From positions 62,001-126,000 of the IMG/VR virus record IMGVR_UViG_3300028666_000022: DNA of 64,000 bases. One strand, 5' to 3'. This document shows, in pieces, positions 19 to 36,074 of the stretch (positions are counted from its first letter, which is position 1; each line of letters begins with the position of its first letter). The translations under genes were made by a program, and so were the position numbers. Below the pieces are notes generated by a model. That model worked only from the letters and a program-made list of their open reading frames with translations. It was not told the DNA's origin and searched no databases.

Positions 19-2794
19 ATGTTTGATACAATTGCTGTTTTAGTTAGATATTTTAAAGAAAATAAACCAAAGGGCAAAAGAACATGGAAAATTGTAGCAT
101 TTTGGGATACATATAATACTAGAGAATCTAAAATTGAAGAACCTGAGTTATCAGAATCAATTAGAAACGAAGCTTTAAATGAATTGTTTAAACTTTGTCA
201 AGTAAAGACATGGGCAGAATGGAAATCTAAATAAAGATATTATATGATTAATGATTATATTAGTTTAAATTATTGTTATAAAATTGATGGTGAAATTTAT
301 AGAAAATTAGATTTTGAACTAGAATTTTCGTTAAATGTTTATTTAACAAATTCGTTAATTAATCAATTGCGCATTGAATTTGATAATGATTTAACTTCTG
401 CTTTAATTAATGTAATGGAATAATTATGAAAACATTAATCAATTTTTTTAAAAATATTTTTTGTGACATTGTTATTTTCATTCCTGCTCCAAAACAAATT
501 TATTTTAAAATAAATACATTAAAAGATGTTCAACGGTATTTAAATAGTATTATATTCATCAACTCTGGTGGTTGTGGTATTGCTGCATTAGCAATGTTTA
601 AGTGGCTTAAGAAAAACAATTTGATTGAAGAAAATACAACTAATTTTGTATTTCTATATAAATCTGACGATGGAACAGACTATTTAAACAATTCCTCTGT
701 TTTAAAACAAAAATCAGGAATACCAGTAGCTCCAGCACATGTTATTTTATTTCATAAAGGTAATTATATTGATTCTGAAGGCATTGTTGAAGTTAACGAA
801 TATCATTGGTTGCAAAATGTTAATGAAGAAAACTTTGTTGTAAGAGCTAATAATAATTTATTCACATGGTGCGGTTTCTTTGATAGAAACAATATTAAAG
901 ATATTGAGAAAATGTTAGAAATTGATATGGACGATATTTTGATATTAAACTAAGAATGTAACAAAATAAAATTATTTTCGTATAATATTTAAACGATAAA
1001 AATAATCAATATGAAAATAGTATTAAATAAATGTATGAATATCAACGAAATGGTTAATACTGTTAGTTCTTTTTCTAATATTGATACTGCTTTAGATATT
1101 ATTAATAAATTTAAACTGAATGAAAAAGTTGTTTTAATTTGGCATAATAATAAACTTATATTAAAATAAATCATGGAAAAATTAACTGAATCTCAAGAAA
1201 ATAATCTTAAATGGTTAGAAGATTTTAGTGGAGCTGAAAAAGAAGTTACTTTTTCAGATGTTTCTAATATTAGTGATGCAATGAATAATATGTTTTTAAA
1301 CGCTTATCTATATTTTTCAAGCGAATTAGATTCTGAAGATAGAATTAATGAACTAATCGAAATATATAAATCAGGTTATAAATTAATTTTAAATGATTAA
1401 ATTATGAAAGCTATATTGAAAATCGGTGATACTATAAAAATATCAAATAAAAACAAAAATCATTCAGATAATGATGTTTGTGCCTATGCAAATATGTGTG
1501 GTGTTGTAACCAATATTTGGGAAGATAATTCCTTTGCTTTATGTTGTGGAAATTCAACATTAATTGTACCAATGCGAAATGCGTTTAAGAAAAAAATAAA
1601 GGGTATTTGGATATATTTAAATGAAGAATTATTATTTCATAAAAGCAAATAAATTATATGCAAGAATATATTACCACACATAAAAAAGAAAATAAAAACA
1701 AATATATTTATTTTACACAAAAAGTAGAATTAGGTATTGAGAATGAAATTGGTTATGAATTAATGTGGAGTGGTAAAGTTAGTAAAGAAGAATGGAATTG
1801 GTCACAAGAAATTGCTAATGAACAACCAAATAGAGTAATAATAAATGAAAATAATGTTATTTGTATAAAAAATTAAACATGACTGATTTACAAAATAAGA
1901 TATTAGAATTAATGAAATCTCAAGATGAATATGAAAAATGGGGATTTTGTTGTATGGGATATAGAGAAATTTCAAATATATTAAAACTAGAAGCTATATC
2001 AGTATCTAATTCAATGCGAACAATGTACAAAAAGGGTATATTAACTAATTATTATTGTAAAGATCAATATGATGATACCCATTATGAATTAAGAAACCCT
2101 AATTTTAAAAAATGATTTATGAAAACAAAAGAAGAAATTTATAAACAAATTGATAAGGCTATGGAAGCCATTAATGAAGGTGGAAAATTTAATGGAATGT
2201 CTTATGAAGATGGCGTAAAATATGCATTAGAATGGGTATGTGGTGATTCGGATGAAGAACCAATGCCAGAAGAAAATTAATGATAAAATAATTTTATTTT
2301 CGTATATTATTAAAAACATTATTATGAAAAATACCGAAAAAGCAATTGAATGGTGGAATAGTTTAGGTAATTTATATAAAAGAAAATTAACCACAGAACA
2401 TTTTGTTGGGAGAAGAGTTAATACATTATGTGATTCTGAAATTGAAGTAATTTATAATGACTTTAATAATTTTGATTTACCTGAAGATTGTACATCATTC
2501 AATGATATAATGTATGATTACAATAAAACAATTAAAATGAAAAAATATAATATTAATAATTATATAATAATTTACCCAAATGAAAGTGGTTGGAGGAAAA
2601 TTATTGAATTAACCCAATCACATTATGAATTAACTCAAGAAAAAGCAAATGATTGGGTTAATATTAGAAAAGAAAATGGTGGTTTTAAAGAACAATTATG
2701 GGTGTTAATTTCAATTTATTATGAAATGTTTTTCAATGGAGAAAAATATTTTAATACTGCAATAATTGATTTATGTGGTGAAGTTATTGAATAA
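19..2794 (+). CDS. Cluster of small hypothetical phage proteins (19..234, 426..953, 1173..1400, 1404..1652, 1658..1876, 1861..2115, 2240..2794)
   Basis: Tightly packed, co-oriented short ORFs with AT-rich leaders; no recognisable motifs. Confidence 0.6.
958..982 (+). promoter_or_regulatory. ECF-sigma-type promoter GTAAC-N16-CGTA (one of 9 copies)
   Basis: GTAAC at 958-962, exactly 16 nt, then CGTA at 979-982. Same spacing at 7019, 7413, 8350 (ATAAC) and 34721 on +, and at 23218, 23963, 27676 and 58048 on -. Confidence 0.75.
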
Positions 2795-2823
2795 TAATAT
2801 ACAAAAATAAATAATATGAGCTT

Positions 2824-3058
2824 AGAGTATGAAAATAATTAAATTTTCTTTATTGATCTTATGTCAATCGGCTGTACTCCTACAACCTCTACCTTATCTT
2901 ACCTAAGTATTTTAAGGTTACATTTATTAGCTATTATTTTTGATTCAATACTTTCGTATTGTCTTGCTAATTTGTTATTAACTTTTATGATTTTACATTA
3001 CCAAAGTATTAATTTAGGTAATAACCACAATATATCAAAGAACGTAAAGATAAATACT
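2824..3058 (-). ncRNA. Stand-alone TnpB omegaRNA-like cassette A (promoter, boxA-like element, structured leader, scaffold; guide read from 2823 downward)
   Basis: Minus strand encodes a TnpB C-terminal-like remnant (VEVVGVQPIDIRSIKKI*). Hairpins ACCTTA/TAAGGT, GGTTGT/ACAGCC and ATTGA/TCAAT plus pseudoknot GGAGTA/TACTCT parallel the tnpB 3' end at 4082-4187. Segment 2978-3058 is identical (81 bp) to 35945-36025. Confidence 0.7.
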
Positions 3059-3185
3059 GGAAATTATGAAAAAAGTAAATAAAAAGAAGCAGAATTTATT
3101 GCCAATATTAGAGCTGCAATACAAAATGAATTAGGCGAGGATGAGTTTAACATATTAATAAAACATAATTTAAAATATTAATACT

Positions 3186-3892
3186 ATGACACAACAAGAA
3201 CTAGATGTTTTAAAAACTTACTTATCTTATGATGAAATCAAAGAGATATGTATTGAAGAATGCAGAAGATTAGTAAGAGAAGGTGTGAATAGTATCAAAC
3301 CAGATAAAAGAATTGACAATTATGAAAGAATTATTTCAAATGCTGTTCACTACTATCTTGAAACTGAAATAGATCAAATACTTGATGTTAATACAAAAGA
3401 ATTAATCAAATCAAATGTATTAAATATTTTAACAAAACCAGAATTTACAAAATATTCTATTTTTAGAACTAAAAATTCTTGGGATAATGAGGATTCTATT
3501 GGAACTAAATATCTTAAAGAAGCAGTTACAGAAAATAAAAATTATATAAAAGAAAAAGTTAAATCCGTAATTGAAGAAATTGATTTTAATAATCTTAAAG
3601 AAGATATTAAAGAATATATTCTTGAAGTTATTGATGAAAAATTTAGTAAATCACTAAAATAAACAACATTATGATTGGTATTGAATTTACATTTAATGAT
3701 GGAACAAAGGACAATTATGATCCCATTAATTTTCCTGATGATTTCGAAGAAACTAATAAAGAATATATTTTACATATGGTGTATGATTATGTAATTGAGA
3801 AATCAATAGTAAAAAGTATTCGACATTATGAATTATGCCCTATTTGTGGTCATGAATTGTATGAAGACGGTTGTCACAATTATCATGAATAA
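3186..3892 (+). CDS. Two hypothetical proteins (3186..3662; 3671..3892 with CxxC)
   Basis: ORF track. Confidence 0.6.
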
Positions 3893-4081
3893 AAAATTTT
3901 TCTAATTTATGTGGTTTATTTAAATAGTTTTAATATATTTACAAAATTTATTTTAACCTAAATAATAGAAAGGAAATTTGTGATGGAAGAAAATATTTGG
4001 AGTGAACTAAGATACGAAGAAACTGCTGAAAATATTGTTAATATTTTTGCTTGACTAACAGGTGAACTCGATGAAATTGGA
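3885..4081 (+). repeat. Diverged ~200-bp direct duplication flanking the IS607-like element (partner 6165-6359)
   Basis: The same intergenic region (atgaataaaa...tttaatatatttacaaaa...aatagaaaggaaa) and gene 5' end occur on both sides. Confidence 0.8.
3983..4081 (+). pseudogene. Truncated 5' copy of ORF 6261..6479, ending at the TnpB element right end
   Basis: MEENIWSELRYEETAENIVNIFA*LTGELDEIG vs MDENIWSELRYEETGENIINIFGWLTGELDETG; TGA at 4052-4054. Confidence 0.9.
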
Positions 4082-4190
4082 ACAGTACAAAATAATATAA
4101 TAATATTACTTCTTTATGATCGAAACCATTGGCGATACTGCAATCACCTCTATCCCATTATCAAACTCGATGTTTGGAATTGCTTTTCTT
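4082..4190 (-). ncRNA. omegaRNA scaffold overlapping the tnpB 3' end; predicted guide TCCAATTTCATCGAGTTCAC
   Basis: Hairpins ATTCCA/TGGGAT, GGTGAT/ATCGCC and ATGGT-TTCG-ATCAT; loop GCAGTA can pair with terminal TACTGT. Confidence 0.7.
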
Positions 4191-5440
4191 AATATATTTA
4201 AACTCCCGTTTAAATCTGCATTTATCAATTTCTTTGATTTTGATCTATATAAACCCCTATAAATTCTTCTACCACTAAATTTATGTTTATTAATATCATT
4301 GTCTTCAATACCAATATTATTATTTTCACATTTTTTATCTTTCTTTTTATACACTGGTATCTCATCTTCATCTATAAAACTAGCCTTACTCGTATAACTT
4401 TCTTCCTGTATTAAGACATTTATACCAAGTAATTTAGCCTTATATTCTAACATCCATATAAACCTACTGTGTGGTATGCCTACAAATTTTTGATTACTCT
4501 CCTTGCCCATATTTATCTCTTGCTTCCACTCCTTATTATTACCAATTATTAAGGTATTAATATTGTTGTCAACTAAATGATTAATAATATATCGACTTGC
4601 TTTATGCAAATAATCATCAACTTTGTTATTCCTTTTATTTGTTAAATTCTTAATTCTATTGCTTGTCCCATATTGTTGTTTTTCTCCTTTCTTATTTATA
4701 TAATGATTTAAATCTGATTTGTAATGAGCTAAATTTTTATTATAATATTGATTAATACTTTTTAATGGTTTACCATTAATAATTATTGATTTAATTACAT
4801 TACTACCTATTGTTGCTAAATTATTTAAACCCAAATCAATACTAGCATACCTATTATTATTTGGCTTTAACTCAACTTCTTTTACTTCATATAATACTTC
4901 AATTACATAATGATTACCTTTTGGTATTACTCTACATTGCTTAATATTTTTAGAATTTATTTTAGTTTTAACCCTAATATTAGTTCTCGATAATTTAACT
5001 ATATTATTTTTTAATTCTTTTTTCGATATAGCATCTAATGTATAAATCAACATAAATCTACCATTTATCTTATCTTTATAATTGGGTAATTCAGGCTTAC
5101 CTTTATATTTAGATTTATTTTTATTATAATCCTTAATAGAAGCAAAGAAAGATTTCCAATTTTTATCTAATTGCATTAGGGTTTGATTTGATATTTTTCT
5201 AGGTAATTGTATATAATCAATATCATTAGAATCAATCATTAATCTATTAATATCATAATAATTTAAATAATTAGCATGATCAACTAAACCTAATTTTTTC
5301 TCATTACTTGTTTTAATAAATTCTTGTCTGATTATATAATTAGCTTTATTGTAAAGGTTTTTACTAAGAAAACATAGTTTATCAATTTCAATAAAATATT
5401 GATTAGATTTTTTAATTATATGTTTTTCTGTTAAAATCAC
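4106..5440 (-). CDS. tnpB: RNA-guided endonuclease TnpB (IS607-associated; rearranged RuvC-II type)
   Basis: SIDLGLNNL (RuvC-I); IIGNN with downstream QEESYTSK; INADLNGSLNI (RuvC-III). Confidence 0.92.
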   Translation of the reverse strand: MILTEKHIIKKSNQYFIEIDKLCFLSKNLYNKANYIIRQEFIKTSNEKKLGLVDHANYLNYYDINRLMIDSNDIDYIQLPRKISNQTLMQLDKNWKSFFASIKDYNKNKSKYKGKPELPNYKDKINGRFMLIYTLDAISKKELKNNIVKLSRTNIRVKTKINSKNIKQCRVIPKGNHYVIEVLYEVKEVELKPNNNRYASIDLGLNNLATIGSNVIKSIIINGKPLKSINQYYNKNLAHYKSDLNHYINKKGEKQQYGTSNRIKNLTNKRNNKVDDYLHKASRYIINHLVDNNINTLIIGNNKEWKQEINMGKESNQKFVGIPHSRFIWMLEYKAKLLGINVLIQEESYTSKASFIDEDEIPVYKKKDKKCENNNIGIEDNDINKHKFSGRRIYRGLYRSKSKKLINADLNGSLNILRKAIPNIEFDNGIEVIAVSPMVSIIKK

Positions 5441-5479
5441 TTTAAATTATTAATGTTATTAAATTATATTTTACTTATT

Positions 5480-6058
5480 TTAGTTTTCAATGAATTGTTT
5501 TATTTCTTCCTTATTCTTCTTTCTCCTTAAGCCATATATCCTTTCTGAAAATGAATAAAATATACTAATTAAATCATTTAGTAAATCTTCTTTATCTTCA
5601 TTTACTTGATTTATTACTAATATTTGTTTTCCTTTTAACTTAAGTAATAATTCAATATAATTAAAACCAAATCTTGTTAATCTATCTTTATTTTCAACAA
5701 TAATCATATTCCAATCATCTCTAACCAATATTTTATTTAATTTAGGACGATTATCATTCATACCTGAAGCAATTTCTTTAATTTCATCAATAATGATATA
5801 CGCATTTTTTGTTGCAAAATCACGTATTCTATTTAATTGATTATCCAATTCTAATTTCTTGTCATTATTAGAAACTCTAGCATATAAAATTACATTGGTT
5901 TGATTATTAATTTCAGGAAATAAGGGTATTTTAACATGGTTGGTTTCATCTAAGAAAGCACCTTTAATTTTACCAGCAACAAATCTATTCCAAGCTGTTT
6001 TATAAGTAACTGAATTTTCTCTTGCATATTCGGATAATTTTTTATATATTTGTTTCAT
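5480..6058 (-). CDS. tnpA: IS607 transposase (HTH + serine recombinase)
   Basis: N-terminal HTH, ILYARVS, EIASG, VENKDRLTRFGF, FSERIYGLR. Confidence 0.92.
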   Translation of the reverse strand: MKQIYKKLSEYARENSVTYKTAWNRFVAGKIKGAFLDETNHVKIPLFPEINNQTNVILYARVSNNDKKLELDNQLNRIRDFATKNAYIIIDEIKEIASGMNDNRPKLNKILVRDDWNMIIVENKDRLTRFGFNYIELLLKLKGKQILVINQVNEDKEDLLNDLISIFYSFSERIYGLRRKKNKEEIKQFIEN

Positions 6059-6260
6059 GAATAAAATGTTTTATATTTGTATATATAAATACTATTAATG
6101 TAGAAAAAGTTTATATAAATTTCAATAATTTTACATATTAATTATAATTAGTTTAAAATATGTAATGAATAAAATTTATAATTAATGTGTTTTAATTTAA
6201 AAATTTTTAATATATTTACAAAAATTATTTTAATTTAAACAATAGAAAGGAAAGTGAGTC

Positions 6261-6479
6261 ATGGATGAGAATATTTGGTCAGAATTACGTTATGAAGAAA
6301 CTGGTGAAAATATTATTAATATTTTTGGTTGGTTAACAGGCGAACTAGATGAAACAGGAATTGCTATTATTGAAATCAATGTTTTAACTGGTTTTGTAAC
6401 TTATCTTGATGAAAGAGCTAAAGACGATTTATACGCTCAGGAAGCAGTTCAAGAAGTTTTTGATATTTACGGTTTATAA
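6261..6479 (+). CDS. Hypothetical protein (intact copy of the gene truncated at 3983-4081)
   Basis: ORF track; paralog alignment. Confidence 0.8.
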   Translation: MDENIWSELRYEETGENIINIFGWLTGELDETGIAIIEINVLTGFVTYLDERAKDDLYAQEAVQEVFDIYGL

Positions 6480-6676
6480 TAATATCTATTTATGAAAAAT
6501 TTAATTAATTTTATTTTCTTTAGATGGAGTAAGTGGGAAGTGTATATACCTAACATTACTGAAACAGTTGGATTATTTCCCGAAAAAAAAGTTGTTGTTG
6601 ATATTTACGTAAAAACAAATATCTATACAGGATTAAAAAAATATAAAAGAGTTGTTAAATATCGAATTAGGCCAGA

Positions 6677-7030
6677 ATGAAATCCCTTACTCAAGAAATT
6701 CTTAATGAATTTGTTCTTGATTTAAAGAAGAATCGATTCAAAGATATTATCAAAGATCTTAAAATAGATTTGTCTTCTAATGAAGACAATACAGAATACA
6801 TTTATCTAGGTTTAATCATTCTTAGGAAAAAAGAAAGACATAAGGGATATGGTTCATTAATCATGAAAGAAATTATATCTTTAGCAAACGAATATAATCT
6901 TCCAATTAAGTTATACTCAACAGCAGCTTATGGTTCAAAGATTGATAAACTAAATGAATTTTATAATAAACATGGTTTTGTTTTAGATAATTTAATGTTG
7001 TGTTATTTTCCAAAAATTGTAACAAAATAA
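6677..7030 (+). CDS. GNAT-family acetyltransferase
   Basis: RHKGYGS motif A; FYNKHGF motif. Confidence 0.75.
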   Translation: MKSLTQEILNEFVLDLKKNRFKDIIKDLKIDLSSNEDNTEYIYLGLIILRKKERHKGYGSLIMKEIISLANEYNLPIKLYSTAAYGSKIDKLNEFYNKHGFVLDNLMLCYFPKIVTK

Positions 7031-7993
7031 ATTAATTTTCGTATAATTTTTAATTTAAAATTAATAAATGAATAATATAAAATATATTGAACCCAATAAA
7101 AGCTTAATGGGGCGAATATTTAGATTTTTTGGTATTGAATTAAACACTAAATTCAATGATGGATATTTTCATACATTTGGTTATTCTGGAAAACAAAAAA
7201 ATAATAAAAGAGATATTATCATAATAGAAAAATTAGATGGAAATGTCATTAGTATACCTAACAATAAAAAATATTATACGTTTCAGAATAATTTTATTTA
7301 TAGTGGACACATTAAAAATATTGAAAAGACTATAGATAATAAACATAACACATTATTTTTAAATGAAAAAATAAGTGTTAATTGGGACGCATAAATTATT
7401 TTTAAAGAATTAGTAACAAATTAGATTAATTTTCGTAATATAAACTATAATCAACAAAACAATAAAATTTATGAAAAAAGAACAACAATGTAAAATATGT
7501 AATAATAAAAAACTAATTGAAGTATTGGTTATGGGAACGGATGTTGATTGGGTGGAATGCCCATATTGTTCGAATAAATCAGAATATATTAAATTTCAAA
7601 ACTCAGTTAATTAATAATCTTATGAAAGAATTAGAAATATCAATTAAGATCCTAAAGGAAGATAAAACAGAATTAGAATGTAAACTTTATTATTTCTTTA
7701 GAAATGGAAGAGTTCCAGATGATAATGAATATTATGAAATGATGGAATTATTAGAAAATTGGTCAATAATAAAATCAAATATTAAGTGTGTCGAAGATAT
7801 TCAAAAAACAATTATTAATAATATTTAGAATATGATAATTTACACTGAAGCAACAATCAACTACATGGCTAACTTGGGTTTAAACAACGAAATTCAAGTT
7901 ATTTTAGCTAATAGTGTGGTAAAAGAAACTGAAAAATTAAAGGTTAAATATGTTGTAATGAATGAAATTCCCGAAACAATTTAGTTTGAAATC

Positions 7994-8353
7994 ATGTCAA
8001 ATACGGTTTATTATATTAACACCAATATTGTTGCTAAATATCGAGAATTTAATAGAGAATCTAATCCATTTCCTATTTGGTTGGGTTTACCACTTAAAGA
8101 TGTTAAATCTTTAGAAAATGATATTAAAATAAACGGCATTGTAAACCCTTTAGAAATAATGGTTTATAAAGGTAAAACATTACTAGTTGAAGGAAATCAT
8201 AGATTATCAATTGCATTAAAACTAAAATTTAAAAAAGTCCCAATTAAATTTACTACTCCAACAAGTGATTATGATTTAAATTATTTTCAAGAAAGAAAAG
8301 AAAAATACGTTAAATTAGATAATGATTTAATAAAAATATTGGAGGTTTTATAA
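7994..8353 (+). CDS. ParB/Srx-like domain protein
   Basis: LENDIKINGIVNPL...LVEGNHRL...VPI. Confidence 0.8.
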   Translation: MSNTVYYINTNIVAKYREFNRESNPFPIWLGLPLKDVKSLENDIKINGIVNPLEIMVYKGKTLLVEGNHRLSIALKLKFKKVPIKFTTPTSDYDLNYFQERKEKYVKLDNDLIKILEVL

Positions 8354-8407
8354 CAAAAATAATTATTTTTCGTACTATATTAAATTTAAACAAATAAAAA
8401 TATTTCC

Positions 8408-9592
8408 ATGAAAATGCAAGAAGCACTTAATATTATTGAAACCAAAGAAAGTGGTTTCATGGTACATTTTGAAAAACGTGAGGGTGGAATGTTATCTTCA
8501 GATTATTTTCCTGACAAACATGCAGGAGAAGAATTAATATCAACATTAAATGAAGCATGGGAACTAGCAGAAAGATTTGCAAAAGCAACTAATGATACAT
8601 ATGTTAATATCTATGTTATAGATCATGATTTTTATCCTGTTGAAGCATATGAAATGAGTATACTTAAAAGATTATTAAAATGATATTAGATAAAAACAAT
8701 ACTAAATGTCCTAAATGTGGTGGTAGCTTTATCGGTGACATTGGTTACGATAACTACACTTGTTATAATTGTGAAAATTGTTGGAGACAAAAATCAAAAA
8801 CAGGATTAGAATCTAATTTAAACTCAGAATAAAATACTAATTATGAAAAAATTACAGAAAATTGTAGCAATACCAATCGAAAAGCAACCTGAAGTTGGTG
8901 ATATTTATAAGTGTGATGCTGGTGAGGGGTATTTTCTCATAACAGAAAAGAAACTAAATTGGACAAAAAATAAAGGGAGCGTATATCAATTATTGTTACT
9001 TTCTGATGATGAAATAAAAGAAAATACAAATACCTTTAAAGAGGGTATTAATGGTGATTGGTATTATAATAGTTTATATCAATTTATTGCTAATACTGGA
9101 GACATAACACCATATGATTTCAAAGTAATTGCATCTTATCCACAATTAAAAACATTTGATGGTTATGAAGAGGTTTCTTCAATGCCAATATATTCTAATT
9201 TACCTACATTTCAATTAGATTTTATTAGTGAATGGTGTAAAAATCCTGTTGATGAAGTTGAGGTAGAATTTGAAACAATTGACGATACTTATGATATTAC
9301 AACAAGTTTAAAACTAACGCCATATAAAGAAGTAATTTGTAATATTCCACAACATTTACATAATATTAATTGTGATTGTGAGGAATGTGAAACAGAAGAA
9401 AATAAGAGAATTTTAGAACAAGCTAAGAAAAAAGCTGAAATTAATAATTCAATATATTCTGCAGCAGAAGAATTCTTTCCTATATATGAAAGTACTTCAG
9501 AAGAAAATAGAGAATTTATGATGCAACAAAGAAGAGCATTTGAAAAAGGTGCTTGCTGGATGAAAGAATATGTAATAAGTAAAATATTATGA
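8408..9592 (+). CDS. Hypothetical proteins (8408..8683, 8843..9592)
   Basis: ORF track; downstream of the promoter copy at 8350. Confidence 0.6.
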
Positions 9593-9813
9593 TAACCGAC
9601 AAAGATTTAAAATTAATGTATCATTCAGATACTGGTAAAAACAACACAAACAGATATATTATTAGTTGTTGTGATGGAAGTGAAGATAGTGTTTGTGATG
9701 CTACAATTACAAATGAAGATACGCGGATAACCGATACTGAAATTACTACATATTCCGATGAGTATGTTTTATTTTTAGAAAACAAATTACTTGAATACTT
9801 AAATAAAGATTAA
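9589..9813 (+). CDS. Small hypothetical protein, paralog 1
   Basis: MITDKDL..DTG...YVLFLENKLLE. Confidence 0.7.
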   Translation: MITDKDLKLMYHSDTGKNNTNRYIISCCDGSEDSVCDATITNEDTRITDTEITTYSDEYVLFLENKLLEYLNKD

Positions 9814-9814
9814 T

Positions 9815-9964
9815 ATGTTAACTGAAAGAGACTTACATAGAGAATTTAAACGAGATACCGGAATTGGTGATGTTATTGCAGTATTTTATGATAATACAGA
9901 TAAAATATATAATAGTAATTATGTTAAGTATCTTGAAAATAGATTACTTGAGTTATTAAAATAA
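9815..9964 (+). CDS. Small hypothetical protein, paralog 2 (49 aa, not in the ORF track)
   Basis: MLTEKDLHREFKRDTG...YVKYLENRLLELLK*; shares both termini with 9589..9813. Confidence 0.7.
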   Translation: MLTERDLHREFKRDTGIGDVIAVFYDNTDKIYNSNYVKYLENRLLELLK

Positions 9965-10351
9965 TAATTTTTCAAATCAAGAACATAATTGTGATTATTA
10001 CACATATTCTGAAGATGGGAATCGAAGATGGTGTACTGATTGTGGAAAAGAAGATATTGGTTTTTAATGTTAAATTAAAAAATTTATAATAATGGGATTA
10101 CACTGGTTTTACTTAAAATATACATATAGATTCAATAATAAAATATTTTTTGTTAGTAAAAGATTAAGAATATTTACTGCTGGTGGTAATCCTACTTTTA
10201 GGTGGATACCTAACATTTGTTATGGTTATTATAAACATTGGGGGTTAACTAACTGTTACGAAAATCTTTAACAATCTTACACCAGATTTAACAATAATTA
10301 ACATAAATTTAACATAAAAAGTGAGTTTTTTATAAAAATAAAACTATATAT

Positions 10352-10570
10352 ATGAAAAAGAAGTTTAATAAAATTATGGAAGATTTAAAAAATAAAAATC
10401 TAATTGTTGTTCGAGTTAATAAAATAGAATTTGAATTAGATAATGGAGATATTTATCCTATCCCATTCGAATTAGATGTTGATGAAAATATTACTCTCGA
10501 AGAATTTCAAAAAATATTAAATGATTCAAAAGATGATATTATAAAAATACTTGATAAATATAATGAGTAA
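10352..10570 (+). CDS. Small protein upstream of tnpA, inside the element
   Basis: ORF overlapping the tnpA start. Confidence 0.6.
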   Translation: MKKKFNKIMEDLKNKNLIVVRVNKIEFELDNGDIYPIPFELDVDENITLEEFQKILNDSKDDIIKILDKYNE

Positions 10571-11189
10571 ACTATTATCATTACAAAAAGTATCAGAAAT
10601 ATTGGGTGTAACTAAGAAAACATTAAGAATATGGGATAATGATGGTAAATTAGTTAGTATTAAAACTATTGGTGGTCATAGAAGATATAAAGAAGATGAT
10701 GTTAATAAATACATCGGTGAATATGTTGAAGTTAATATTAATAATGTTTTAACATATAGTAGAGTAAGTAGTCATGAACAAAAAACCAAAGGAGATTTAG
10801 ATAGACAATCACAAAGAATAAGTGAATATTGTGCTAAGAAAAAATACAAAGTAGAATATATTATTAAAGATGTTGGTTCAGGACTATCAGATACAAGAAG
10901 TGGATTTGTTAAAATGGTTGATTTGGTAATTAAGAGAAAAATTAATAAAGTAATCATTGAAAATAAAGATAGATTAACCAGATTTCAATTTAATTTAATT
11001 AAAGTATTTTTTAATAGTTATGATGTGGAAATTGAATGTATTGAAAATACGAATATATCAAATGAAGAAGAATTTGTAAATGATATAATGATGTTAATGG
11101 CAAGTTTTTCTGGTAAATTATATGGTAAGAGAAGTGTGAAACGTAAAAAAGAATTAAAAGAACAAAAATTAAAAGATAAAAATTTTTAA
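10551..11189 (+). CDS. tnpA: IS607 transposase (MerR-like HTH + serine recombinase)
   Basis: LGVTKKTLRIWD...GGHRRY, YSRVSS, DVGSGL, ENKDRLTRF, SFSGKLYG. Confidence 0.93.
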   Translation: MINIMSKLLSLQKVSEILGVTKKTLRIWDNDGKLVSIKTIGGHRRYKEDDVNKYIGEYVEVNINNVLTYSRVSSHEQKTKGDLDRQSQRISEYCAKKKYKVEYIIKDVGSGLSDTRSGFVKMVDLVIKRKINKVIIENKDRLTRFQFNLIKVFFNSYDVEIECIENTNISNEEEFVNDIMMLMASFSGKLYGKRSVKRKKELKEQKLKDKNF

Positions 11190-11205
11190 AACGATACTAA
11201 TTATT

Positions 11206-12003
11206 ATGAAATTAATTCAGAAATATTTAAAAACCGATGATGAGATTGAATTATTAAGAGAGAGTAATTTATTAGTATCAAAAACACTTGCAGAAATTGC
11301 TAAAAATATAAAAGTTGGCGTTTCTACACTTTATCTTGATAAAATTGCTGAAGAGTTTATTATGGATAATAATGCAATACCTGCTTTTAAAGGATATAAT
11401 GGATTTCCAAATACATTATGTACATCAGTAAATGATGAAATAATTCATGGAATTCCATCTGATTATATTTTGAATGAAGGTGATATAATATCGGTTGATT
11501 GTGGTGTGATATTAAATGGATGGTATGGAGATAGTGCTTATACGTTTCCTGTTGGTAAAATTTCAAAGGAAATACTGCAATTATTGGTATATACTAAAGA
11601 ATCTCTTAAAGAAGGAATAAAAAAAGCAATCATAGGAAATAGAATTGGTGATATTTCTTATGCAGTTCAAACTAAAGTAGAAAGTGGTGGATATAGTGTT
11701 GTAAGAGAAATGGTTGGTCACGGTATTGGAAGAAATCTTCATGAAGAACCTAATATTCCAAATTATGGTAAGCAAGGAACGGGAATAAAACTTGAAAAGG
11801 GACTTGTAATATGTATTGAACCAATGATAAATCTTGGAAAAAGAGAAATGTTGTTAATGAAGGATGGATGGACAATAAAAACTGCTGATGGAAAACCTTC
11901 AGCACATTTCGAAAAAGCAATTGTGATTCACAAAGAAAAAGCAGATATATTAACAAATTTTGATTTTATTGAAAAAATTTTAGATAATAATGAAAATAAT
12001 TAG
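11206..12003 (+). CDS. map: Type I methionine aminopeptidase
   Basis: CTSVNDEIIHGIP, SVDCG, GDSAYT, GHGIG..HEEP, CIEPM, SAHFE. Confidence 0.95.
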   Translation: MKLIQKYLKTDDEIELLRESNLLVSKTLAEIAKNIKVGVSTLYLDKIAEEFIMDNNAIPAFKGYNGFPNTLCTSVNDEIIHGIPSDYILNEGDIISVDCGVILNGWYGDSAYTFPVGKISKEILQLLVYTKESLKEGIKKAIIGNRIGDISYAVQTKVESGGYSVVREMVGHGIGRNLHEEPNIPNYGKQGTGIKLEKGLVICIEPMINLGKREMLLMKDGWTIKTADGKPSAHFEKAIVIHKEKADILTNFDFIEKILDNNENN

Positions 12004-13126: not shown

Positions 13127-13522
13127 CGGTCATTCACTTTAAGATAATAAAATGAAAAAGAATAGAATTATACCTTATGTTCCTCCAAAAGATAGATGTG
13201 TAATATCTGAAGGAAATAATAAAAAATTATCATATAAATATATTATGAACGAAAAACACATAATGATTGAAGATACTGGATGCTGGGTATACAAACTACC
13301 TAATTTCATTAGTAAATATTTTGTTAAAACATACACTATTCAAGGTGCTGTTTATGTTAAGAAACATGGAATTGATGAGAAACCCGTATTTTATTCAGAT
13401 ACAATAAAAGGACTAGAAATACTTAAAATTATATCAACTTCTGAAAAAAGAGCAGATAAACTATCGTTTGAATATTACAATAAAAAATATCCACAATATG
13501 GTGAATTTATTAAATTCATAAA

Positions 13523-14275: not shown

Positions 14276-15777
14276 TGACATCCGAAGAAATAAAAAAAAT
14301 AATGATTGATGGTGGTTATGAATTACATAGTCATTCTGGTGATGATAAATTATTTACTTTTATAAAACATTTTAATAATAGAGGACAACATGAGCCAGAT
14401 GTTTTAAAATCAACGCATTTTATTTATTGTGAAGTTAATACTTCTAATGAATTTAGATTTACTGCAATTACAAATAGAATGTCATATTTTTTAGATTCTG
14501 GTTGGATGGGTTCTGTTGATAATGATCAACATTTCGTAACTAACGAATGTAATTTTGCTTATTATGCACGACTGATTCAAATTAATAATCCGTTTTAAAA
14601 TATATCATTAAATAAACATACTTTATATATTTTATTATTCACAGCAATTTAAAACTTAAAAAACATGGTAGCAGAGGACAGACTAACAACAGAATTTAAC
14701 TTACCTACACACGAGAATGAAATTTTTAAAGCAGAAGAGGTGCTTGAAAAGATTAGAACCAAATTTTATAAGGTTCAGTTATTAAAGAGTATTGATAATG
14801 AAACACACGAAAAACTGTATGAAGAAGCAATGAGAGTATTATATTATGTTGGCAGTTTATCAATGCCAGCATTTAATATTAGAGAAGAATTAGAAACAAA
14901 ATATACATTATTATACATAAAATCACCACAATTAGGAAAGAAGTTATTTTTAGATGATTATGAAAAGATACATTATAATTATAATATCTTAAAAGCAAGA
15001 TGCTATAGATTGCTCGATGATATTGATAAAGAATTCTTTAAAAGACACAAGAAAAGGCCAAGGAATTGGTAATAAAATATATTATTAGCATCTGTATTAT
15101 CGGATGCTTAAATTTTCTAATAATTTAAAATCATTTAATTATGAGTTATGATATTTACGGAAATAATTTAGCTCGTGGTCATTGCGAGGTTCATCCTTGG
15201 GTTGGTGAAGAATACCCTTGTTCATTATGTTATGAAGAAAACGATAAACATAATAAACAAAATAAGATATATAATCAACAAGAAAAAGATTATTACGATG
15301 CAATGGAACGAGAACATTATGATGAAATAATTAAGAAAAATTATTTTAAATATAGAATATTATGTTTCATTGTATTAATTTTACAGAATTCATTAAATCG
15401 ATTGAAAATCAAATTAGAAATGATTTATCAAAAAGAAAAACGAAAATATTAACATCATGATCCTCAAAAATAATAAAATTTTCGAGTCAATCTCTTCTGA
15501 ATTGGCTCTATTTTTAGTAAATAAAACACGTTATAAGATTTACTACGTTTTTCATTTAAATGATAATCAGCCAATGATTCTACTAACAAAAGAAAACATT
15601 GATAAATATACTGAATTACATGATGATGCTATAAATAGAAGAGTTGCTGACAATGGAATATTTCAATGTTTAGGAGAACTACCAACTTTAGTAATTAAAA
15701 CATTTTCGAATAATAAATATCCGATGCAAATCGAAAGTTTTTATGATGATTATCAGTGGCTTAATTGGTCTGAATAA
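14272..15777 (+). CDS. Hypothetical proteins (14272..14598, 14665..15072, 15141..15452, 15457..15777)
   Basis: ORF track. Confidence 0.6.
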
Positions 15778-16055
15778 TGAATATTAATTTAATTCCAATT
15801 ATATTAAAAGATCTAAGAAAACTATATCTTCTTGATAAGAAAATATTTAATAAGAATGATTACTATTCTTTAGATATTTGGAGAGATGTTTTAGATGAAC
15901 ATTTAAACGACATATTTTATGTTAAATATAATACTCAAATTGTTGGTACAATAATATCTTATGTTCTTGATGTTTATTATATAGATTCAATTGGTATTTT
16001 ATCTGAGTTTAGAAACAAAGGCATTTGTGAACTACCAAATAAATCGGCTTCTTAA
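15777..16055 (+). pseudogene. 3'-truncated RimI-like GNAT acetyltransferase, interrupted at 16027 by the tnpB right end
   Basis: Paralogous to 17454..17897 up to FRNKGIC, then reads into element sequence (ELPNKSAS*). Confidence 0.88.
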
Positions 16056-16150
16056 CTAATGTTAAGAATTTTAAACGTTTCATAGATTGTGCCTATTGTT
16101 ATAGGTCTTATTTTATCTCCACGTCTGTTATCGTTAGTCCCTAACGATTG
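16027..16150 (-). ncRNA. IS200/IS605-type omegaRNA and right end; predicted guide AAATGCCTTTGTTTCTAAAC
   Basis: Ends GGTAGTTCAC; hairpins ATCGTTAG/CTAACGAT, CCTAT/ATAGG and TTCTTAAC/GTTAAGAA; GTGGA/TTCAC pseudoknot. Confidence 0.75.
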
Positions 16151-17354
16151 TAATATTATCTTTGGTATTAATAGTTTGATTTTCATTAATTAAATCATTA
16201 TTAATACCACTCTCTTTTACTTTTCTTCCTTCTTTTAAAATATTTAAGGCTGCATTTAGATCCCTGTCATGTTTCATCCCACATTTAGGACAAATCCACT
16301 CTCTTACCTTAAGAGTCAAGTTCTGGTTAATATACCCACATTCATTACATGCCTTACTTGAAGGATAAAAACGGTTTATTTTAGTGATAGTTTTATCACT
16401 CCAATTAGCTTTATATTCAAGCATGTTAATGAATTTGCCCCATGAGGCATCTGATATTGACTTATTTAATCCTGACTTAGCTGACTGACCATTAGGTAGG
16501 TATTTACCATTATCATCCTGTTTTGGTTTACAAGATTTTAACATACCTTTAATATTCAAGTCTTCTAAATAAATTTGATCATATTTTTTTATTAAATCTG
16601 TACTGATCTTATGTAAATTATCTACACGAGAATTGGTTATCTTCTTATGTATTCTCGCTACCTTTAATCTTTGTTTTTCATATCTATTACTTCCTTTAGT
16701 TTTTCTACTTAAATGTTGCTGTCCCCTTTTTAGCTTTTTCGCATATGTCTTTGTATATTTATTGTTTTTATATTTATAACCATCTGATGTAATAATTAGA
16801 TCCTTAATTCCCAAATCAATACCAACCTCTTTACCAGTTTTAGGTAACTTAACATGAGATGTTTCAACCAAAATAGAAACAAAATATTCATTAGTTGGTG
16901 TTTTAGAAACAGTGCATTGATGTATTTCACCTTTAAATTTTCTGTCAATTATAATTGGTATTCCTTCTTTAAATTTAGGTATATGTAATTTATTTTTTAT
17001 TAACTTTGTAAATTGTGGCACACAAAAACTATTTCTATCATGCTTACTCTTAAATCTTGGAAACCTTGTTCTTCCCTTAAAGAAACCATTATAAGCTCCA
17101 TCTAAACATTTAAGAGATTGTTGCATGGATTGAGAATTAGTTTCATTTAACCAAGTAAAATCATTATTTTGTTTTAGTGTGGTGAGAGATTTACAATTAT
17201 CAACATAACTTAAACCTTGTTTATTTGTTTTGTATTCTTCAATCCTTTCGTTTAAATAATAGTTATAAACAAACCTAATACACCCAAAATGTTTATTTAA
17301 TAAGATCATTTGGTTATTATCAGGTTTTAGTTTATATTTGTAAGCTTTTAACAT
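16134..17354 (-). CDS. tnpB: RNA-guided endonuclease TnpB (IS200/IS605 OrfB type), no adjacent transposase
   Basis: MLKAYKYKL..HFGCIRFVYN, GIDLG, YLEDL, PSSKACNEC...WICPKC, HDRDLNAA. Confidence 0.95.
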   Translation of the reverse strand: MLKAYKYKLKPDNNQMILLNKHFGCIRFVYNYYLNERIEEYKTNKQGLSYVDNCKSLTTLKQNNDFTWLNETNSQSMQQSLKCLDGAYNGFFKGRTRFPRFKSKHDRNSFCVPQFTKLIKNKLHIPKFKEGIPIIIDRKFKGEIHQCTVSKTPTNEYFVSILVETSHVKLPKTGKEVGIDLGIKDLIITSDGYKYKNNKYTKTYAKKLKRGQQHLSRKTKGSNRYEKQRLKVARIHKKITNSRVDNLHKISTDLIKKYDQIYLEDLNIKGMLKSCKPKQDDNGKYLPNGQSAKSGLNKSISDASWGKFINMLEYKANWSDKTITKINRFYPSSKACNECGYINQNLTLKVREWICPKCGMKHDRDLNAALNILKEGRKVKESGINNDLINENQTINTKDNITIVRD

Positions 17355-17453
17355 TTATTCTATTCTGTTACTTTAGAATAAATACTAAAATATTTTAAAA
17401 AAGTCAAGAATGTTTAATTTATTTTAATTATATTTGTAGTAAATGATTATATT

Positions 17454-17897
17454 ATGAACATTAATTTACTTCCAATTACTTCTAAAAATCTCTTTAATGT
17501 AACACTCATTGAAGATCATTTATTTGATGTGAATGAACGTTATGATTTAGAAACATTTAAATCAATATTAATTGATTATCCAAACAATATATTTTTCATT
17601 AAATTAGATAATATAGTTGGTATATTAATATCGTATGTTCTTGATGAGTATTACTATCTTGATTCAATTGGAATATTACCCGAATTTAGAAATAAGGGAA
17701 TGTGCAAACAATTATTTAACGATTATCTTATTCCAGAAGCTAAGAGATTATCTTGTGATGAAATTAGATTACACGTAAATAAAGATAATACTGCAGCAAT
17801 TGGATTATATATGAAATTAGGGTTTGAAACTATTGAAGTAATTGAGAATTATTATGGAGATAATAGAAATGGATATTATATGAAAAAGAAAATATAA
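17454..17897 (+). CDS. RimI-like GNAT N-acetyltransferase (intact copy)
   Basis: PEFRNKG; LHVNKDNTAAIGLYMKLGF..IENYY; preceded by TATATTTG at 17429-17436. Confidence 0.88.
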   Translation: MNINLLPITSKNLFNVTLIEDHLFDVNERYDLETFKSILIDYPNNIFFIKLDNIVGILISYVLDEYYYLDSIGILPEFRNKGMCKQLFNDYLIPEAKRLSCDEIRLHVNKDNTAAIGLYMKLGFETIEVIENYYGDNRNGYYMKKKI

Positions 17898-31154: not shown

Positions 31155-31163
31155 TAAAATTTG

Positions 31164-31203
31164 AACCATCAAAACTAAATAATTAATAATAGTTTTGATG
31201 GTT
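31164..31203 (+). terminator. Inverted repeat, possible terminator
   Basis: aaccatcaaaacta / tagttttgatggtt. Confidence 0.6.
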
Positions 31204-31242
31204 TATATATAAAAATAAAATTAAATAAAAATAAATAAAATT

Positions 31243-35783: not shown

Positions 35784-36025
35784 ACAGTACGTAATAACAT
35801 ATAATTTATATTAACTCTTTATGGTCGAAACCATTGGCGATACTGCAATCACCTCTATTCCATTATCAAACCGATGTTTGGAATTGCTTTTATTAGCTAT
35901 TATTTTTAATTCAACATCTAAAAGATATTGTCTTGCTAAATTGTTTAACTTTTATGATTTTACATTACCAAAGTATTAATTTAGGTAATAACCACAATAT
36001 ATCAAAGAACGTAAAGATAAATACT
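35784..36025 (-). ncRNA. Stand-alone TnpB omegaRNA cassette B; predicted guide CCATGTGTGAGATTTATTTA
   Basis: 35816-35891 matches 4111-4187 (2 substitutions + 1 loop indel); same ACAGTAC end; leader shared with cassette A. Confidence 0.8.
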
Positions 36026-36074
36026 ATAAATTTTGAAAATTTTAAATAAATTTATATAAAAATTATAATAAGTT

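What the first reader, a model, noticed from the sequence alone, without database searches (positions are those of the whole stretch)
3885..6479. TnpB element between a dead gene copy (guide donor) and a diverged live copy, locus 1
SEEN: about 200 bp (previous stop, promoter region, first 33 codons) is duplicated with divergence on either side of the element. The predicted guide (reverse complement of 4062-4081) mismatches the intact copy (6340-6359) at guide positions 4, 5, 13 and 19. KNOWN: free-standing homing endonucleases of T4-like phages cut a rival's allele of a neighbouring gene while their own allele is resistant (intronless homing). INFERENCE: an RNA-guided analogue. Alternative: recombination between IS copies at nearby sites in two lineages. 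The copies diverge throughout, so the mismatches alone do not prove selection.
Basis: partly seen in the sequence, partly recalled or inferred. Interest (0 to 1): 0.8.

Follow-up and report, generated by a model that had tools for sequence, protein, structure and literature searches.

The report
Transposon flanked by two gene alleles
An intact TnpA/TnpB insertion sequence in a 340-kb soil phage sits exactly between a truncated, just-inactivated copy and a complete, diverged copy of one small gene, so its guide RNA is templated by the dead copy; whether the phage uses this to cut rival alleles is untested.

Summary
A 2.07-kb IS607-like element lies on the minus strand at 4082-6152 (tnpA, tnpB, structured right end). 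It is flanked by about 208 bp of direct repeat, 3873-4081 and 6153-6360, that meets both element ends to within 7 nt.

The left copy holds the upstream gene's last codons, a promoter-like region and 33 codons with one TGA. The right copy opens an intact 72-codon gene. The coding parts are 82% identical with dN/dS 0.16, so they are alleles from two phage lineages, not an in-place duplication that decayed.

A second, unrelated TnpB (16134-17354) has the same layout around an acetyltransferase gene. These are the only partial gene duplications in the 64 kb.

The layout is rare: about 3 clear cases in roughly 160 phage TnpB loci. The third case has TnpB in the opposite orientation, so the dead copy need not be the guide donor.

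The only other natural allele, P0002, matches the guide codons at protein level. Its DNA could not be fetched, and the flanking motif (TAM) that the nuclease requires beside its target is unknown.

Best reading: a recombination joint between lineages, made at the element. RNA-guided homing with a resistant rescue copy is possible but unproven.

The parts
3671..3892 (+). Upstream gene (73 aa, unknown function). Its last ~20 nt are part of the left repeat.
   Evidence: ORF list. Found with the same downstream arrangement in 8 contigs from several samples.
3873..4081 (+). Left repeat copy (allele A): end of upstream gene, promoter-like TTTACA-17-AATAAT, RBS, ATG 3983, 33 codons, TGA at 4052-4054. 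Truncated at the element's right end.
   Evidence: E2 and A23 are normal residues in the wider protein family, so TGA is the only clearly inactivating change.
4062..4081 (-). Predicted guide template. The guide would read TCCAATTTCATCGAGTTCAC.
   Evidence: Lies directly 3' of the right-end boundary defined against L077 and the MITE. No other match with up to 3 mismatches in the window.
4082..6152 (-). IS607-like insertion sequence (about 2.07 kb). Boundaries are uncertain by 2 nt at the right end and up to 7 nt at the left end.
   Evidence: Alignment to the homologous element in L077. End alignment of four copies.
4082..4250 (-). Right end: predicted omega-RNA scaffold overlapping the 3' end of tnpB.
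   Evidence: MFE -31.6 kcal/mol, z = -2.45. Consensus hairpins with 4 compensatory pairs in 3 copies. 94% identical copy in the MITE at 35808-35871. No Rfam family.
4106..5440 (-). tnpB (444 aa), RuvC D202 / E346-E347 / D409 present.
   Evidence: Pfam OrfB_IS605 3.9e-21 and Cas12f1-like_TNB 4.6e-08. These residues are invariant in the family alignment A5.
5480..6058 (-). tnpA, serine recombinase (192 aa).
   Evidence: Pfam Resolvase 2.9e-17. 36% identical to the second tnpA at 10551-11189.
6059..6152 (-). Left end of the element.
   Evidence: Conserved with L077 and with the MITE up to ...TTAGT / CTTGT / TAAGT.
6153..6360 (+). Right repeat copy (allele B): about 20 nt resembling the end of the upstream gene, promoter-like TTTACA-17-AACAAT, RBS, first 33 codons of the live gene.
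6261..6479 (+). Live gene X (72 aa), member of a widespread ~65-aa domain family of unknown function.
6340..6359 (-). Site in the live copy equivalent to the guide target; 4 mismatches (guide positions 4, 5, 13, 19).
15777..16026 (+). Locus 2: truncated acetyltransferase N-terminus (83 codons, no internal stop) meeting the right end of a second TnpB element.
   Evidence: Right-end boundary from the family-wide ...GGTAGTTCAC end.
16027..17453 (-). Locus 2: solo IS605/IS1341-type tnpB element (tnpB 16134-17354). Its left-end boundary lies somewhere in 17415-17453.
   Evidence: Pfam HTH_OrfB_IS605, OrfB_IS605 and TNB. Comparison with L008.
17454..17897 (+). Locus 2: complete acetyltransferase gene (147 aa), about 50% aa identical to the truncated copy.
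35787..36073 (-). Non-autonomous miniature copy (MITE) of the locus-1 element, with the same ends. It could supply a second guide to TnpB in trans.

Best explanation
Locus 1 is a recombination joint between two diverged phage lineages, formed at an intact IS607-like TnpA/TnpB element.

Shown:
- The element's two ends are each joined cleanly to the same 208-bp stretch of the target region (end of upstream gene, promoter, first 33 codons of gene X).
- The left copy is a truncated allele that was functional until very recently.
- The right copy is a complete allele about 18% different at nucleotide level, mostly at synonymous sites.

Inferred origin: the element first interrupted gene X at codon 33 in one lineage. 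The present arrangement then arose by homologous recombination with a diverged relative. I cannot tell two routes apart.
- A crossover inside the element, with a genome carrying it about 208 bp upstream. A shared IS is the best homology between genomes this diverged.
- The more economical route: an aberrantly excised circle of element plus 208 bp of flank integrates by a single crossover into an intact allele. That is textbook insertion-duplication and yields one truncated 5' copy and one full copy.

The product restores the gene while keeping the element, which is why it would persist.

Inferred consequence: the guide is now templated by the dead allele and cannot pair properly with the resident copy. 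The element can therefore stay next to an intact gene without cutting it. An identical rescue copy would recreate the element's own target. The element could also be copied, with the resistant 5' patch, into genomes whose allele matches the guide. That last step is a possibility, not shown.
For: - Exact flanking.
- Two-lineage origin: dS 0.71, dN 0.116, dN/dS 0.16. Of 14 differing codons, 8 are synonymous (binomial p 0.002).
- The dead copy's non-stop differences E2 and A23 are ordinary residues in the wider family. A23 is the family consensus. Only the TGA is inactivating.
- The element is intact: tnpA, tnpB with catalytic residues, conserved structured right end.
- The only two partial gene duplications in 64 kb both flank TnpB elements of unrelated families.
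- A third case in an unrelated phage contig (L029) shows the same gene-wise order, dead 5' fragment then element then full gene, but with TnpB reversed. Recombination predicts this. A guide-donor design does not.
- The arrangement is 100% identical in several independent assemblies.
- Self-immunity: 4 of 20 mismatches at locus 1. At locus 2 I count 5 of 20, by hand.
- Background: nuclease genes sit at boundaries of genetic exchange between phages (PMC10448857). A homing nuclease drives recombination-dependent segmental duplication in T6 (PMC13096335).
Against: - No parental genome was found. None has the element only at codon 33, only upstream, or absent.
- Two independent insertions within 208 bp of a 340-kb genome are unlikely a priori. 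At locus 2 the spacing would be about 250 bp.
- The circle route needs an aberrant excision that has not been documented for this family.
- The layout is rare (about 3 in roughly 160 loci), yet two cases sit 10 kb apart in one genome. Nothing here explains that clustering.
- The short-range end structure is unclear. The dinucleotide is AC next to the right end and AT next to the left end at locus 1. L077 and the MITE have AC at both ends.
Confidence: 0.5

Rival explanations
1. One reading: an RNA-guided counterpart of intronless homing, kept by selection. The dead copy exists to template a guide against rival alleles of gene X. TnpB cuts them in co-infection. The break is repaired from this genome, copying the element and the resistant 5' patch, so a rescue copy travels with the drive.
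For: - The guide is templated by the dead copy, and the resident copy is mismatched at seed positions 4 and 5.
- The same polarity is seen at locus 2 with an unrelated TnpB. It appears in miniature at the MITE, with flanks CATGGAC / TATGAAC around the start codon of gene 36075.
- P0002 has the dead copy's residues in guide codons 27-33. It comes from an ENA assembly whose accession falls in the same number series as assemblies that hold this phage.
- The dead copies are almost undecayed: one stop at locus 1, none at locus 2. That fits if each homing event makes the dead copy afresh from the recipient's own gene.
- Live copy and P0002 differ only in codons 15-47 (p about 0.03).
- TnpB-driven spread into IS-free plasmid copies is published (PMC11870625). 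Spread into co-infecting phages is proposed in a review (PMC13565253).
Against: - No DNA-level target is known.
- The TAM is unknown. The LE-side flanks of three family members (..GTTAATT..GTTCATA..ATTTTAA) share at most T[GA]TT four bases out. A P0002-like allele (Thr-Pro codons) would give NGGNGT there.
- P0002 is only modestly closer to the dead copy (3 differences) than to the live copy (4) in the N-terminus.
- The 15-47 clustering matches the family's variable region.
- Guide-region mismatch density equals background.
- L029 has the dead fragment at the left end.
- The layout is absent from 35 loci of the abundant IS3 family and from about 73 other loci of the IS1 family.
Confidence: 0.25
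2. A long, initially perfect target duplication was made when the element inserted. The intact copy, which matched the guide, was then cut by TnpB and repaired from a diverged co-infecting relative, leaving a resistant allele.
For: - The repeat meets both element ends, like a target duplication.
- Short flank similarities occur at other copies: 7 of 7 at L077 and 5 of 7 at the MITE.
- It explains why the surviving live copies are diverged.
Against: - Serine-recombinase (IS607) and HUH (IS605) transposition make no target duplications (review PMC13565253).
- 208- and 250-bp duplications have no known mechanism in these families.
- The 7-bp repeat at L077 lies in low-complexity AATTAA-rich sequence.
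- The foreign tract would have to stop exactly at the left-end boundary.
Confidence: 0.1
3. An in-place duplication followed by ordinary divergence and decay of the truncated copy.
For: The direct-repeat geometry only.
Against: With dS 0.71, a truncated 33-codon fragment evolving neutrally should carry many non-synonymous and frame-breaking changes. It has a single stop, and its other differences are family-typical residues. dN/dS is 0.16.
Confidence: 0.02
4. Assembly artefact: two strains carrying the element at different sites were joined across the repeat by the assembler.
For: - Only the JGI contig spans the whole element.
- Short-read depth in the runs examined is 2-5x.
- Two 151-nt contigs end exactly at 4081 and 6360.
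Against: - Contigs from other samples cover 2980-5660 and 4124-16479 with 100% identity and a 1.5-kb identical overlap.
- No contig or protein shows an alternative junction or a second context for either flank.
- The contig breaks at 4124-4149 are explained by the 34-nt exact repeat shared with the MITE.
Confidence: 0.03

Closest known systems
TnpB / omega-RNA homing of IS200/IS605 and IS607 elements (Karvelis 2021, PMC8612924; Meers 2023, bioRxiv 10.1101/2023.03.14.532601; review PMC13565253)
   Same: - tnpA plus tnpB.
- Guide read out from the right end into flanking DNA.
- The nuclease is expected to cut the matching site that lacks the element.
   Different: - The flank that templates the guide is a dead allele, and the matching intact site in the same genome is a diverged allele.
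- The element ends (ACAGTA...TTAGT) and flanks lack the GG ends and G-rich TAM reported for most IS607 members.
- No RAGATH-18-type RNA was detected.
IS605 gene drive in multicopy plasmids ('non-restorative homing', PMC11870625)
   Same: TnpB cuts the orthologous IS-free copy and repair copies the element in. This is the step the homing reading needs between co-infecting phages.
   Different: That system was shown in plasmids with identical flanks. It has no rescue copy and no allele discrimination by substitutions.
Intronless homing by free-standing homing endonucleases of T-even phages (SegF, SegG, MobE; summarised in PMC13565253)
   Same: A nuclease gene sits beside a conserved gene. Self and non-self are told apart by substitutions. 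Flanking markers are co-converted in mixed infection.
   Different: Recognition here would be by RNA, re-set by whatever flanks the element. A truncated copy of the target gene is retained. No cleavage data exist.
Nuclease genes at boundaries of genetic exchange between phages (PMC10448857), and SegB-driven segmental amplification (PMC13096335)
   Same: A nuclease-bearing mobile gene marks the point where sequence from two lineages meets. Nuclease activity promotes recombination-dependent duplication.
   Different: Those cases involve protein-only endonucleases and whole-gene modules or identical tandem repeats. They are not a diverged partial duplication meeting transposon ends.
Insertion-duplication by single crossover of a circle carrying a 5' gene fragment (Campbell-type integration; my own knowledge)
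   Same: It gives exactly this product: truncated 5' copy, then insert, then full copy, with the repeat meeting the insert on both sides.
   Different: It requires a circular element-plus-flank intermediate, which is not documented for this element.
Synthetic home-and-rescue / cleave-and-rescue gene drives (my own knowledge)
   Same: A drive nuclease targets a gene and carries a recoded, cleavage-resistant copy of it.
   Different: Those are engineered, in insects. Here the layout would be natural and is unproven.

Membership tests
IS607 family | Serine-recombinase TnpA | tested here: met
   PF00239 Resolvase, E 2.9e-17. 36% identical to the MerR-HTH tnpA at 10551-11189.
IS607 family | tnpB downstream of tnpA on the same strand, with RuvC catalytic residues | tested here: met
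   PF01385 and PF07282. D202, E346/E347 and D409 are invariant in alignment A5.
IS607 family | Ends in GG, inserts at or after GG, G-rich TAM (as summarised in PMC13565253) | tested here: not met
   The ends are ACAGTA...TTAGT, and there is no GG at the left-end flank. The other IS607-type element in the window and 16 relatives end in ..AACGG.
TnpB / OMEGA system | Structured omega-RNA from the right end, overlapping the tnpB 3' end and followed directly by the guide | tested here: inconclusive
   Predicted fold z = -2.45. Conserved hairpins with 4 compensatory pairs, but from only 3 sequences. No Rfam match. No RNA data.
TnpB / OMEGA system | TAM next to the target, matching the sequence that flanks the left end | tested here: inconclusive
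   Only three confident left-end flanks, and no motif directly adjacent. There is a possible T[GA]TT at -8..-5.
RAGATH-18-guided IS607 TnpB (PMC11061315) | RAGATH-18-type RNA downstream of tnpB | tested here: not met
   No Rfam hit at gathering threshold or at E up to 5 over 3950-4450.
Intronless homing | Resident allele resistant through substitutions in the target | tested here: met
   Sequence level only: 4 of 20 mismatches, including guide positions 4 and 5. Resistance itself was not assayed.
Intronless homing | A natural rival allele that carries the target | tested here: inconclusive
   P0002 has identical residues in codons 27-33, but its DNA could not be fetched. No other close allele exists in 5.8 billion proteins, IMG/VR or JGI contigs.
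Intronless homing | Cleavage of the rival allele and biased inheritance in mixed infection | not testable with these tools
   Needs bench work.

The most novel reading that the evidence does not exclude
A natural RNA-guided 'home-and-rescue' drive in a jumbo phage. TnpB, guided by the remnant of the last allele it invaded, cuts matching alleles of an accessory gene in co-infecting relatives. Repair copies in the transposon together with a diverged, cleavage-resistant 5' part of the gene. The element can therefore live inside genes without destroying them, and each homing event resets the guide.
Probability: 0.22. Interest if true: 0.85.

Novelty: new variant of a known kind. Interest (0 to 1): 0.6.

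Why it matters
TnpB is known to keep its transposon in place by cutting the emptied site. It has been shown to drive an IS through plasmid copies. Spread between co-infecting phages is so far only proposed.

This locus, and its twin 10 kb away, give a concrete natural substrate for testing that proposal. It is an intact element whose guide is templated by one allele of a gene while a diverged, mismatched allele sits intact on its other side.

If the arrangement only records recombination, it still shows transposons acting as crossover points and as markers of mosaic joints between diverged jumbo phages. It also shows a way that gene-disrupting insertions get compensated.

If the arrangement is used for homing, it would be a natural counterpart of engineered drive-with-rescue designs. 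It would also be an RNA-guided version of phage marker exclusion.

Tried and rejected
- **Close phage relatives.** None in INPHARED.
- **Alleles of gene X.** Searched in IMG/VR, JGI metagenome contigs and the 5.8-billion-protein set. Only the window's own contig and P0002 turned up.
- **P0002 DNA.** Not retrievable.
- **Read and contig lay-down on 3600-6700 in four runs.** Depth was 2-5x. No joint skipping the element and no alternative junction were seen, so nothing can be concluded about empty sites.
- **Dead acetyltransferase fragment as query.** Only the two window copies.
- **Right-end core searches in IMG/VR.** The exact 34-mer found only the two window copies. The degenerate 16-base pattern found 14 stretches of DNA. 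Two are the window's own contig. Of the other 12, 11 looked like chance and one (L077) was a true homologue.
- **Flank-duplication screens.** I screened 47 + 7 loci, 36 loci and 74 loci. Hits at L046 are tRNA genes. L016/17 and L145 are repeat-motif Zn-finger proteins. L180/191/195 are 33-38% paralogues, not dead/live pairs.
- **Relatives of the L029 gene,** to look for parental states: only the contig itself.
- **Chimeric live gene** (B-type codons 1-47, A-type 48-72): p about 0.03. I discount it because the differences fall in the family's variable region.
- **TGA read as Trp (code 4).** Rejected. Long ORFs such as the 1111-aa gene are open under code 11.
- **A 2-bp crossover core (AC) at both ends.** Fits L077 and the MITE, but locus 1 has AC/AT. 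Short flanking repeats (7 of 7 at L077) lie in low-complexity sequence. Left as an observation.
- **PDB sequence search for TnpB.** Only a weak hit, so I did not pursue a structural TAM inference.
Full report
**Source and setting.** The window is 24% G+C. It encodes a fused Mre11/Rad50-type nuclease-ATPase, a Dda-like helicase and a DnaG-type primase, so this is a large T4-style replication and recombination machinery. It is part of a 339,898-bp viral contig from a rhizosphere metagenome (JGI 3300028666; IMG/VR UViG_3300028666_000022). Window position 1 is contig position 62001. No close relative exists among deposited phage genomes.

**The observation.** On the minus strand lie tnpB (4106-5440, 444 aa; OrfB_IS605 and TNB domains) and tnpA (5480-6058, 192 aa; serine recombinase).
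- The stretch 3873-4081 is repeated at 6153-6360.
- The left copy carries the last codons and stop of the upstream gene, a promoter-like TTTACA-17-AATAAT, an RBS, and ATG 3983. It has 33 codons with TGA at 4052-4054, where the right copy has TGG.
- The right copy has the same parts and opens the intact 72-codon gene 6261-6479.
- The reverse complement of 4062-4081 mismatches that of 6340-6359 at guide positions 4, 5, 13 and 19.

**Element boundaries.**
- A degenerate search for the conserved right-end core found one true homologue. L077, in a 140-kb phage contig, holds a complete tnpA-tnpB element about 78% identical in DNA.
- Similarity to it begins at window 4082 (ACAGTA...) and ends near 6152 (...TTAGT).
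- A 287-bp miniature derivative in the window (35787-36073) has the same two ends, and a more diverged one lies near 2815-3090.
- The 208-bp repeat therefore meets both ends of the element, with an uncertainty of 2 nt at the right end and up to 7 nt at the left end.
- The right end folds into hairpins that are conserved, with a few compensatory changes, in the three close copies. No Rfam family matches.
- The RuvC residues D202, E346/E347 and D409 are invariant in the family alignment.
- Unlike the other IS607-type element in the window, whose family ends in ..AACGG, this element does not end in GG and has no GG at its left-end flank. It departs from the usual IS607 end and target rule as summarised in PMC13565253.

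**The two copies are alleles, not a decayed duplicate.**
- Over 33 codons the copies are 81/99 identical, with dS 0.71, dN 0.116 and dN/dS 0.16.
- Of 14 differing codons, 8 are synonymous, including AGT/TCA and AGA/CGT. The excess of synonymous change has p = 0.002.
- An exhaustive HMMER search showed that gene X belongs to a widespread ~65-aa domain family (85 representatives).
- In that family's alignment, the dead copy's apparently private residues E2 and A23 are ordinary, and A23 is the consensus. The TGA is the only clearly inactivating change.
- A 33-codon stump cannot have been under protein-level selection. The divergence must therefore have built up while both sequences were working genes in separate genomes.

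This excludes simple in-place duplication and decay. It means a second lineage contributed.

**Is it a single curiosity?** No.
- An all-against-all six-frame comparison of the window finds only two partial gene duplications, and both flank TnpB elements.
- At locus 2 a solo IS605/IS1341-type tnpB (16134-17354, minus strand) is unrelated at sequence level to the first. It lies between 83 codons of an acetyltransferase (15777-16026, no internal stop) and a complete acetyltransferase gene (17454-17897). The two are about 50% identical in protein, with dN/dS 0.47.
- The right end of that family finishes with a hairpin and GGTAGTTCAC in 15 relatives. This fixes the boundary at 16026/16027 and the guide as AAATGCCTTTGTTTCTAAAC. 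By hand count, the live copy mismatches it at five positions, including 2, 5 and 8.
- The third TnpB element (10551-13126, with a methionine-aminopeptidase-like passenger) shows no such flanks.

**How general is the layout?** I screened the flanks of about 160 TnpB loci from phage contigs for similarity between the two sides.
- Apart from the window's own two loci, there is one clear case. In L029, about 60 codons of a methyltransferase-like gene end at an IS605 left-end hairpin. The full, diverged gene starts 20-30 nt after the right end.
- Read along the gene, the order is the same: dead 5' fragment, element, full gene. But TnpB points the other way, so the dead fragment is not the guide donor there.
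- The other hits were tRNA genes, repeat-motif Zn-finger proteins or distant paralogues.

The layout is therefore rare and not tied to one element orientation.

**Search for natural alleles and empty sites.**
- Gene X has only one other close allele in the 5.8-billion-protein collection: P0002 (88% identical), on a 638-bp ENA contig whose DNA could not be fetched.
- P0002 shares A15, V19 and I32 with the dead copy, and D2 and G23 with the live copy. In the N-terminal 33 codons it differs from the dead copy at 3 residues and from the live copy at 4.
- In guide codons 27-33 (GELDEIG) it equals the dead copy, whereas the live copy has T32. So a natural allele exists that should match the guide better than the resident copy at guide position 5. 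This is known only at protein level.
- After the target, P0002 continues Thr-Pro. On the TnpB strand that puts NGGNGT where a TAM would be.
- The three confident left-end flanks of this element family read ..GTTAATT..GTTCATA and ..ATTTTAA. They share no adjacent motif, and at most T[GA]TT four bases out. The TAM remains unknown, and what little there is does not favour P0002 as a target.
- IMG/VR and JGI contig scans returned only the window's own contig.
- Every contig from other samples that carries the upstream gene or the live gene shows the same element-bearing arrangement, 100% identical.
- The lay-down of four runs had 2-5x depth and showed no alternative joint.

**Artefact check.**
- Contigs from other samples cover 2980-5660 and 4124-16479, with a 1.5-kb identical overlap inside the element.
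- The contig breaks at 4124-4149 coincide with the 34-nt exact repeat shared with the MITE.
- Only one contig spans the whole element, so a strain chimera is unlikely but not formally excluded.

**Mechanism.** What is shown: an intact TnpA/TnpB element is joined at each end to the same 208-bp segment taken from two diverged alleles. The left copy is truncated and just inactivated, and the right copy is complete. The rest is inference.

The arrangement is what homologous recombination produces in either of two cases.
- (a) Two genomes carry the element at sites 208 bp apart and cross over inside it. Between genomes about 18% diverged, a shared IS is the best homology available.
- (b) A circle containing the element plus 208 bp of its flank integrates by one crossover into an intact allele. 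This is textbook insertion-duplication. A 5' fragment gives one truncated and one full copy, with the repeat meeting the insert on both sides.

Route (b) needs one insertion, one aberrant excision and one crossover. It explains the short repeat lengths and works for either element orientation. Route (a) needs two insertions within 208 bp of a 340-kb genome. Neither parent was found.

In both routes the product restores a gene that the element had interrupted while keeping the element. TnpB's known role of re-cutting emptied sites would otherwise make that insertion hard to lose (PMC8612924; Meers et al., bioRxiv 10.1101/2023.03.14.532601).

There is also a selective reason why the surviving rescue copy is diverged. 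An identical copy would recreate the element's own target next to it.

**The homing reading.** Given the layout, a genome with an allele matching the guide and a suitable TAM would be cut about codons 27-33. Its left end is homologous to the dead copy and its right end to the live copy. Repair would therefore copy in the element and the resistant 5' patch, and would make a new dead copy out of the recipient's own gene. That would explain why the dead copies are so little decayed.

This is an attractive consequence. It is close to published TnpB drive in plasmids (PMC11870625) and to the 'non-restorative homing' into co-infecting phages proposed in PMC13565253. But nothing here shows it happens.
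- The guide region has no special mismatch pattern.
- The TAM is unknown.
- The only candidate target is known at protein level.
- The L029 case shows the layout arising without the guide-donor relation.

I put it at about one in four.

**Comparison and novelty.** The parts are known: an IS607-like element, TnpB, and a guide taken from the flank. So are the processes invoked: recombination at mobile nuclease genes (PMC10448857) and nuclease-promoted duplication (PMC13096335). I found no published description of a transposon-encoded RNA-guided nuclease sitting exactly between a truncated and a complete diverged allele of the same gene. I therefore rate it a new variant of a known kind. It is of moderate-to-high interest because it makes inter-phage TnpB homing directly testable with defined substrates.

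Noticed in passing
window 15777-17897: Second locus with the same layout. A truncated acetyltransferase N-terminus (83 codons, no stop) meets the right end of a solo IS605-type tnpB, and a complete ~50%-identical acetyltransferase gene starts within 100 nt of tnpB's start. The right-end boundary is at 16026/16027, not at 16031 as simple homology suggests.
   Followed up: partly
window 10551-13126: Third element: IS607-type tnpA (MerR HTH plus resolvase) and tnpB with an M24 metallopeptidase (methionine-aminopeptidase-like) gene between them as a passenger. It ends in the canonical ..AACGG. Its TnpB has relatives at 66-89% aa identity in more than 40 phage contigs, so the element appears to be spreading among large phages. 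No flank duplication in 35 loci.
   Followed up: partly
window 35787-36073: 287-bp miniature derivative of the locus-1 element, with a right end 94% identical. It is inserted in the second codon of gene 36075-36800. The flanks read CATGGAC and TATGAAC. The old start (ATG GAC AGC) is left beside the right end and a new ATG AAC AGC follows the left end, a miniature of the same polarity.
   Followed up: partly
window ~2815-3090: A second, more diverged miniature element about 800 bp upstream of locus 1. It shares 106 nt at 94% with the internal part of the 35.8-kb MITE (2978-3083 vs 35945-36050). Its boundaries are uncertain.
   Followed up: partly
window 3938-4110: The dead copy keeps its promoter-like hexamers and RBS and points into the element's right end. 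Transcription from it would be antisense to the predicted omega-RNA and guide.
   Followed up: no
window 4081 and 6360: Two 151-nt Logan contigs from different runs end exactly at the two homology boundaries (3931-4081 in X5, 6210-6360 in X2). This could be coincidence or a branch point from a variant junction.
   Followed up: no
L029 (IMGVR_UViG_3300025678_000046) 879-3315: An unrelated phage contig with a dead ~60-codon fragment of a methyltransferase-like gene, then an IS605-type element (left-end hairpin, small RHH gene, tnpB), then the full diverged gene. TnpB orientation is opposite to the window's loci.
   Followed up: partly
window 6261-6479: Gene X belongs to a widespread ~65-aa domain family (IWSEIR...DAW.T...E.G...Y.D.RAK.D.YAQE). 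The domain is found alone or at either end of larger proteins, with 85 representatives at 50% clustering. No Pfam or PHROG family, and the function is unknown.
   Followed up: partly
L077 2583-2589 and 4565-4571: The homologous element in L077 is flanked by a perfect 7-bp direct repeat, AATTAAC. IS607 elements are said to make no target duplications. The region is AATTAA-rich, so this may be chance.
   Followed up: no
window 59530-60459; 46669-47082; 29871-32322; 51708-55043: Five tandem 189-nt repeats inside a Zn-finger (DUF4379/DUF723) protein gene. 45-nt periodic repeats in gene 46207-47124. Two adjacent ice-binding-like domain proteins. A single 1111-aa ORF fusing Mre11-like phosphoesterase and Rad50-like ATPase.
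   Followed up: no
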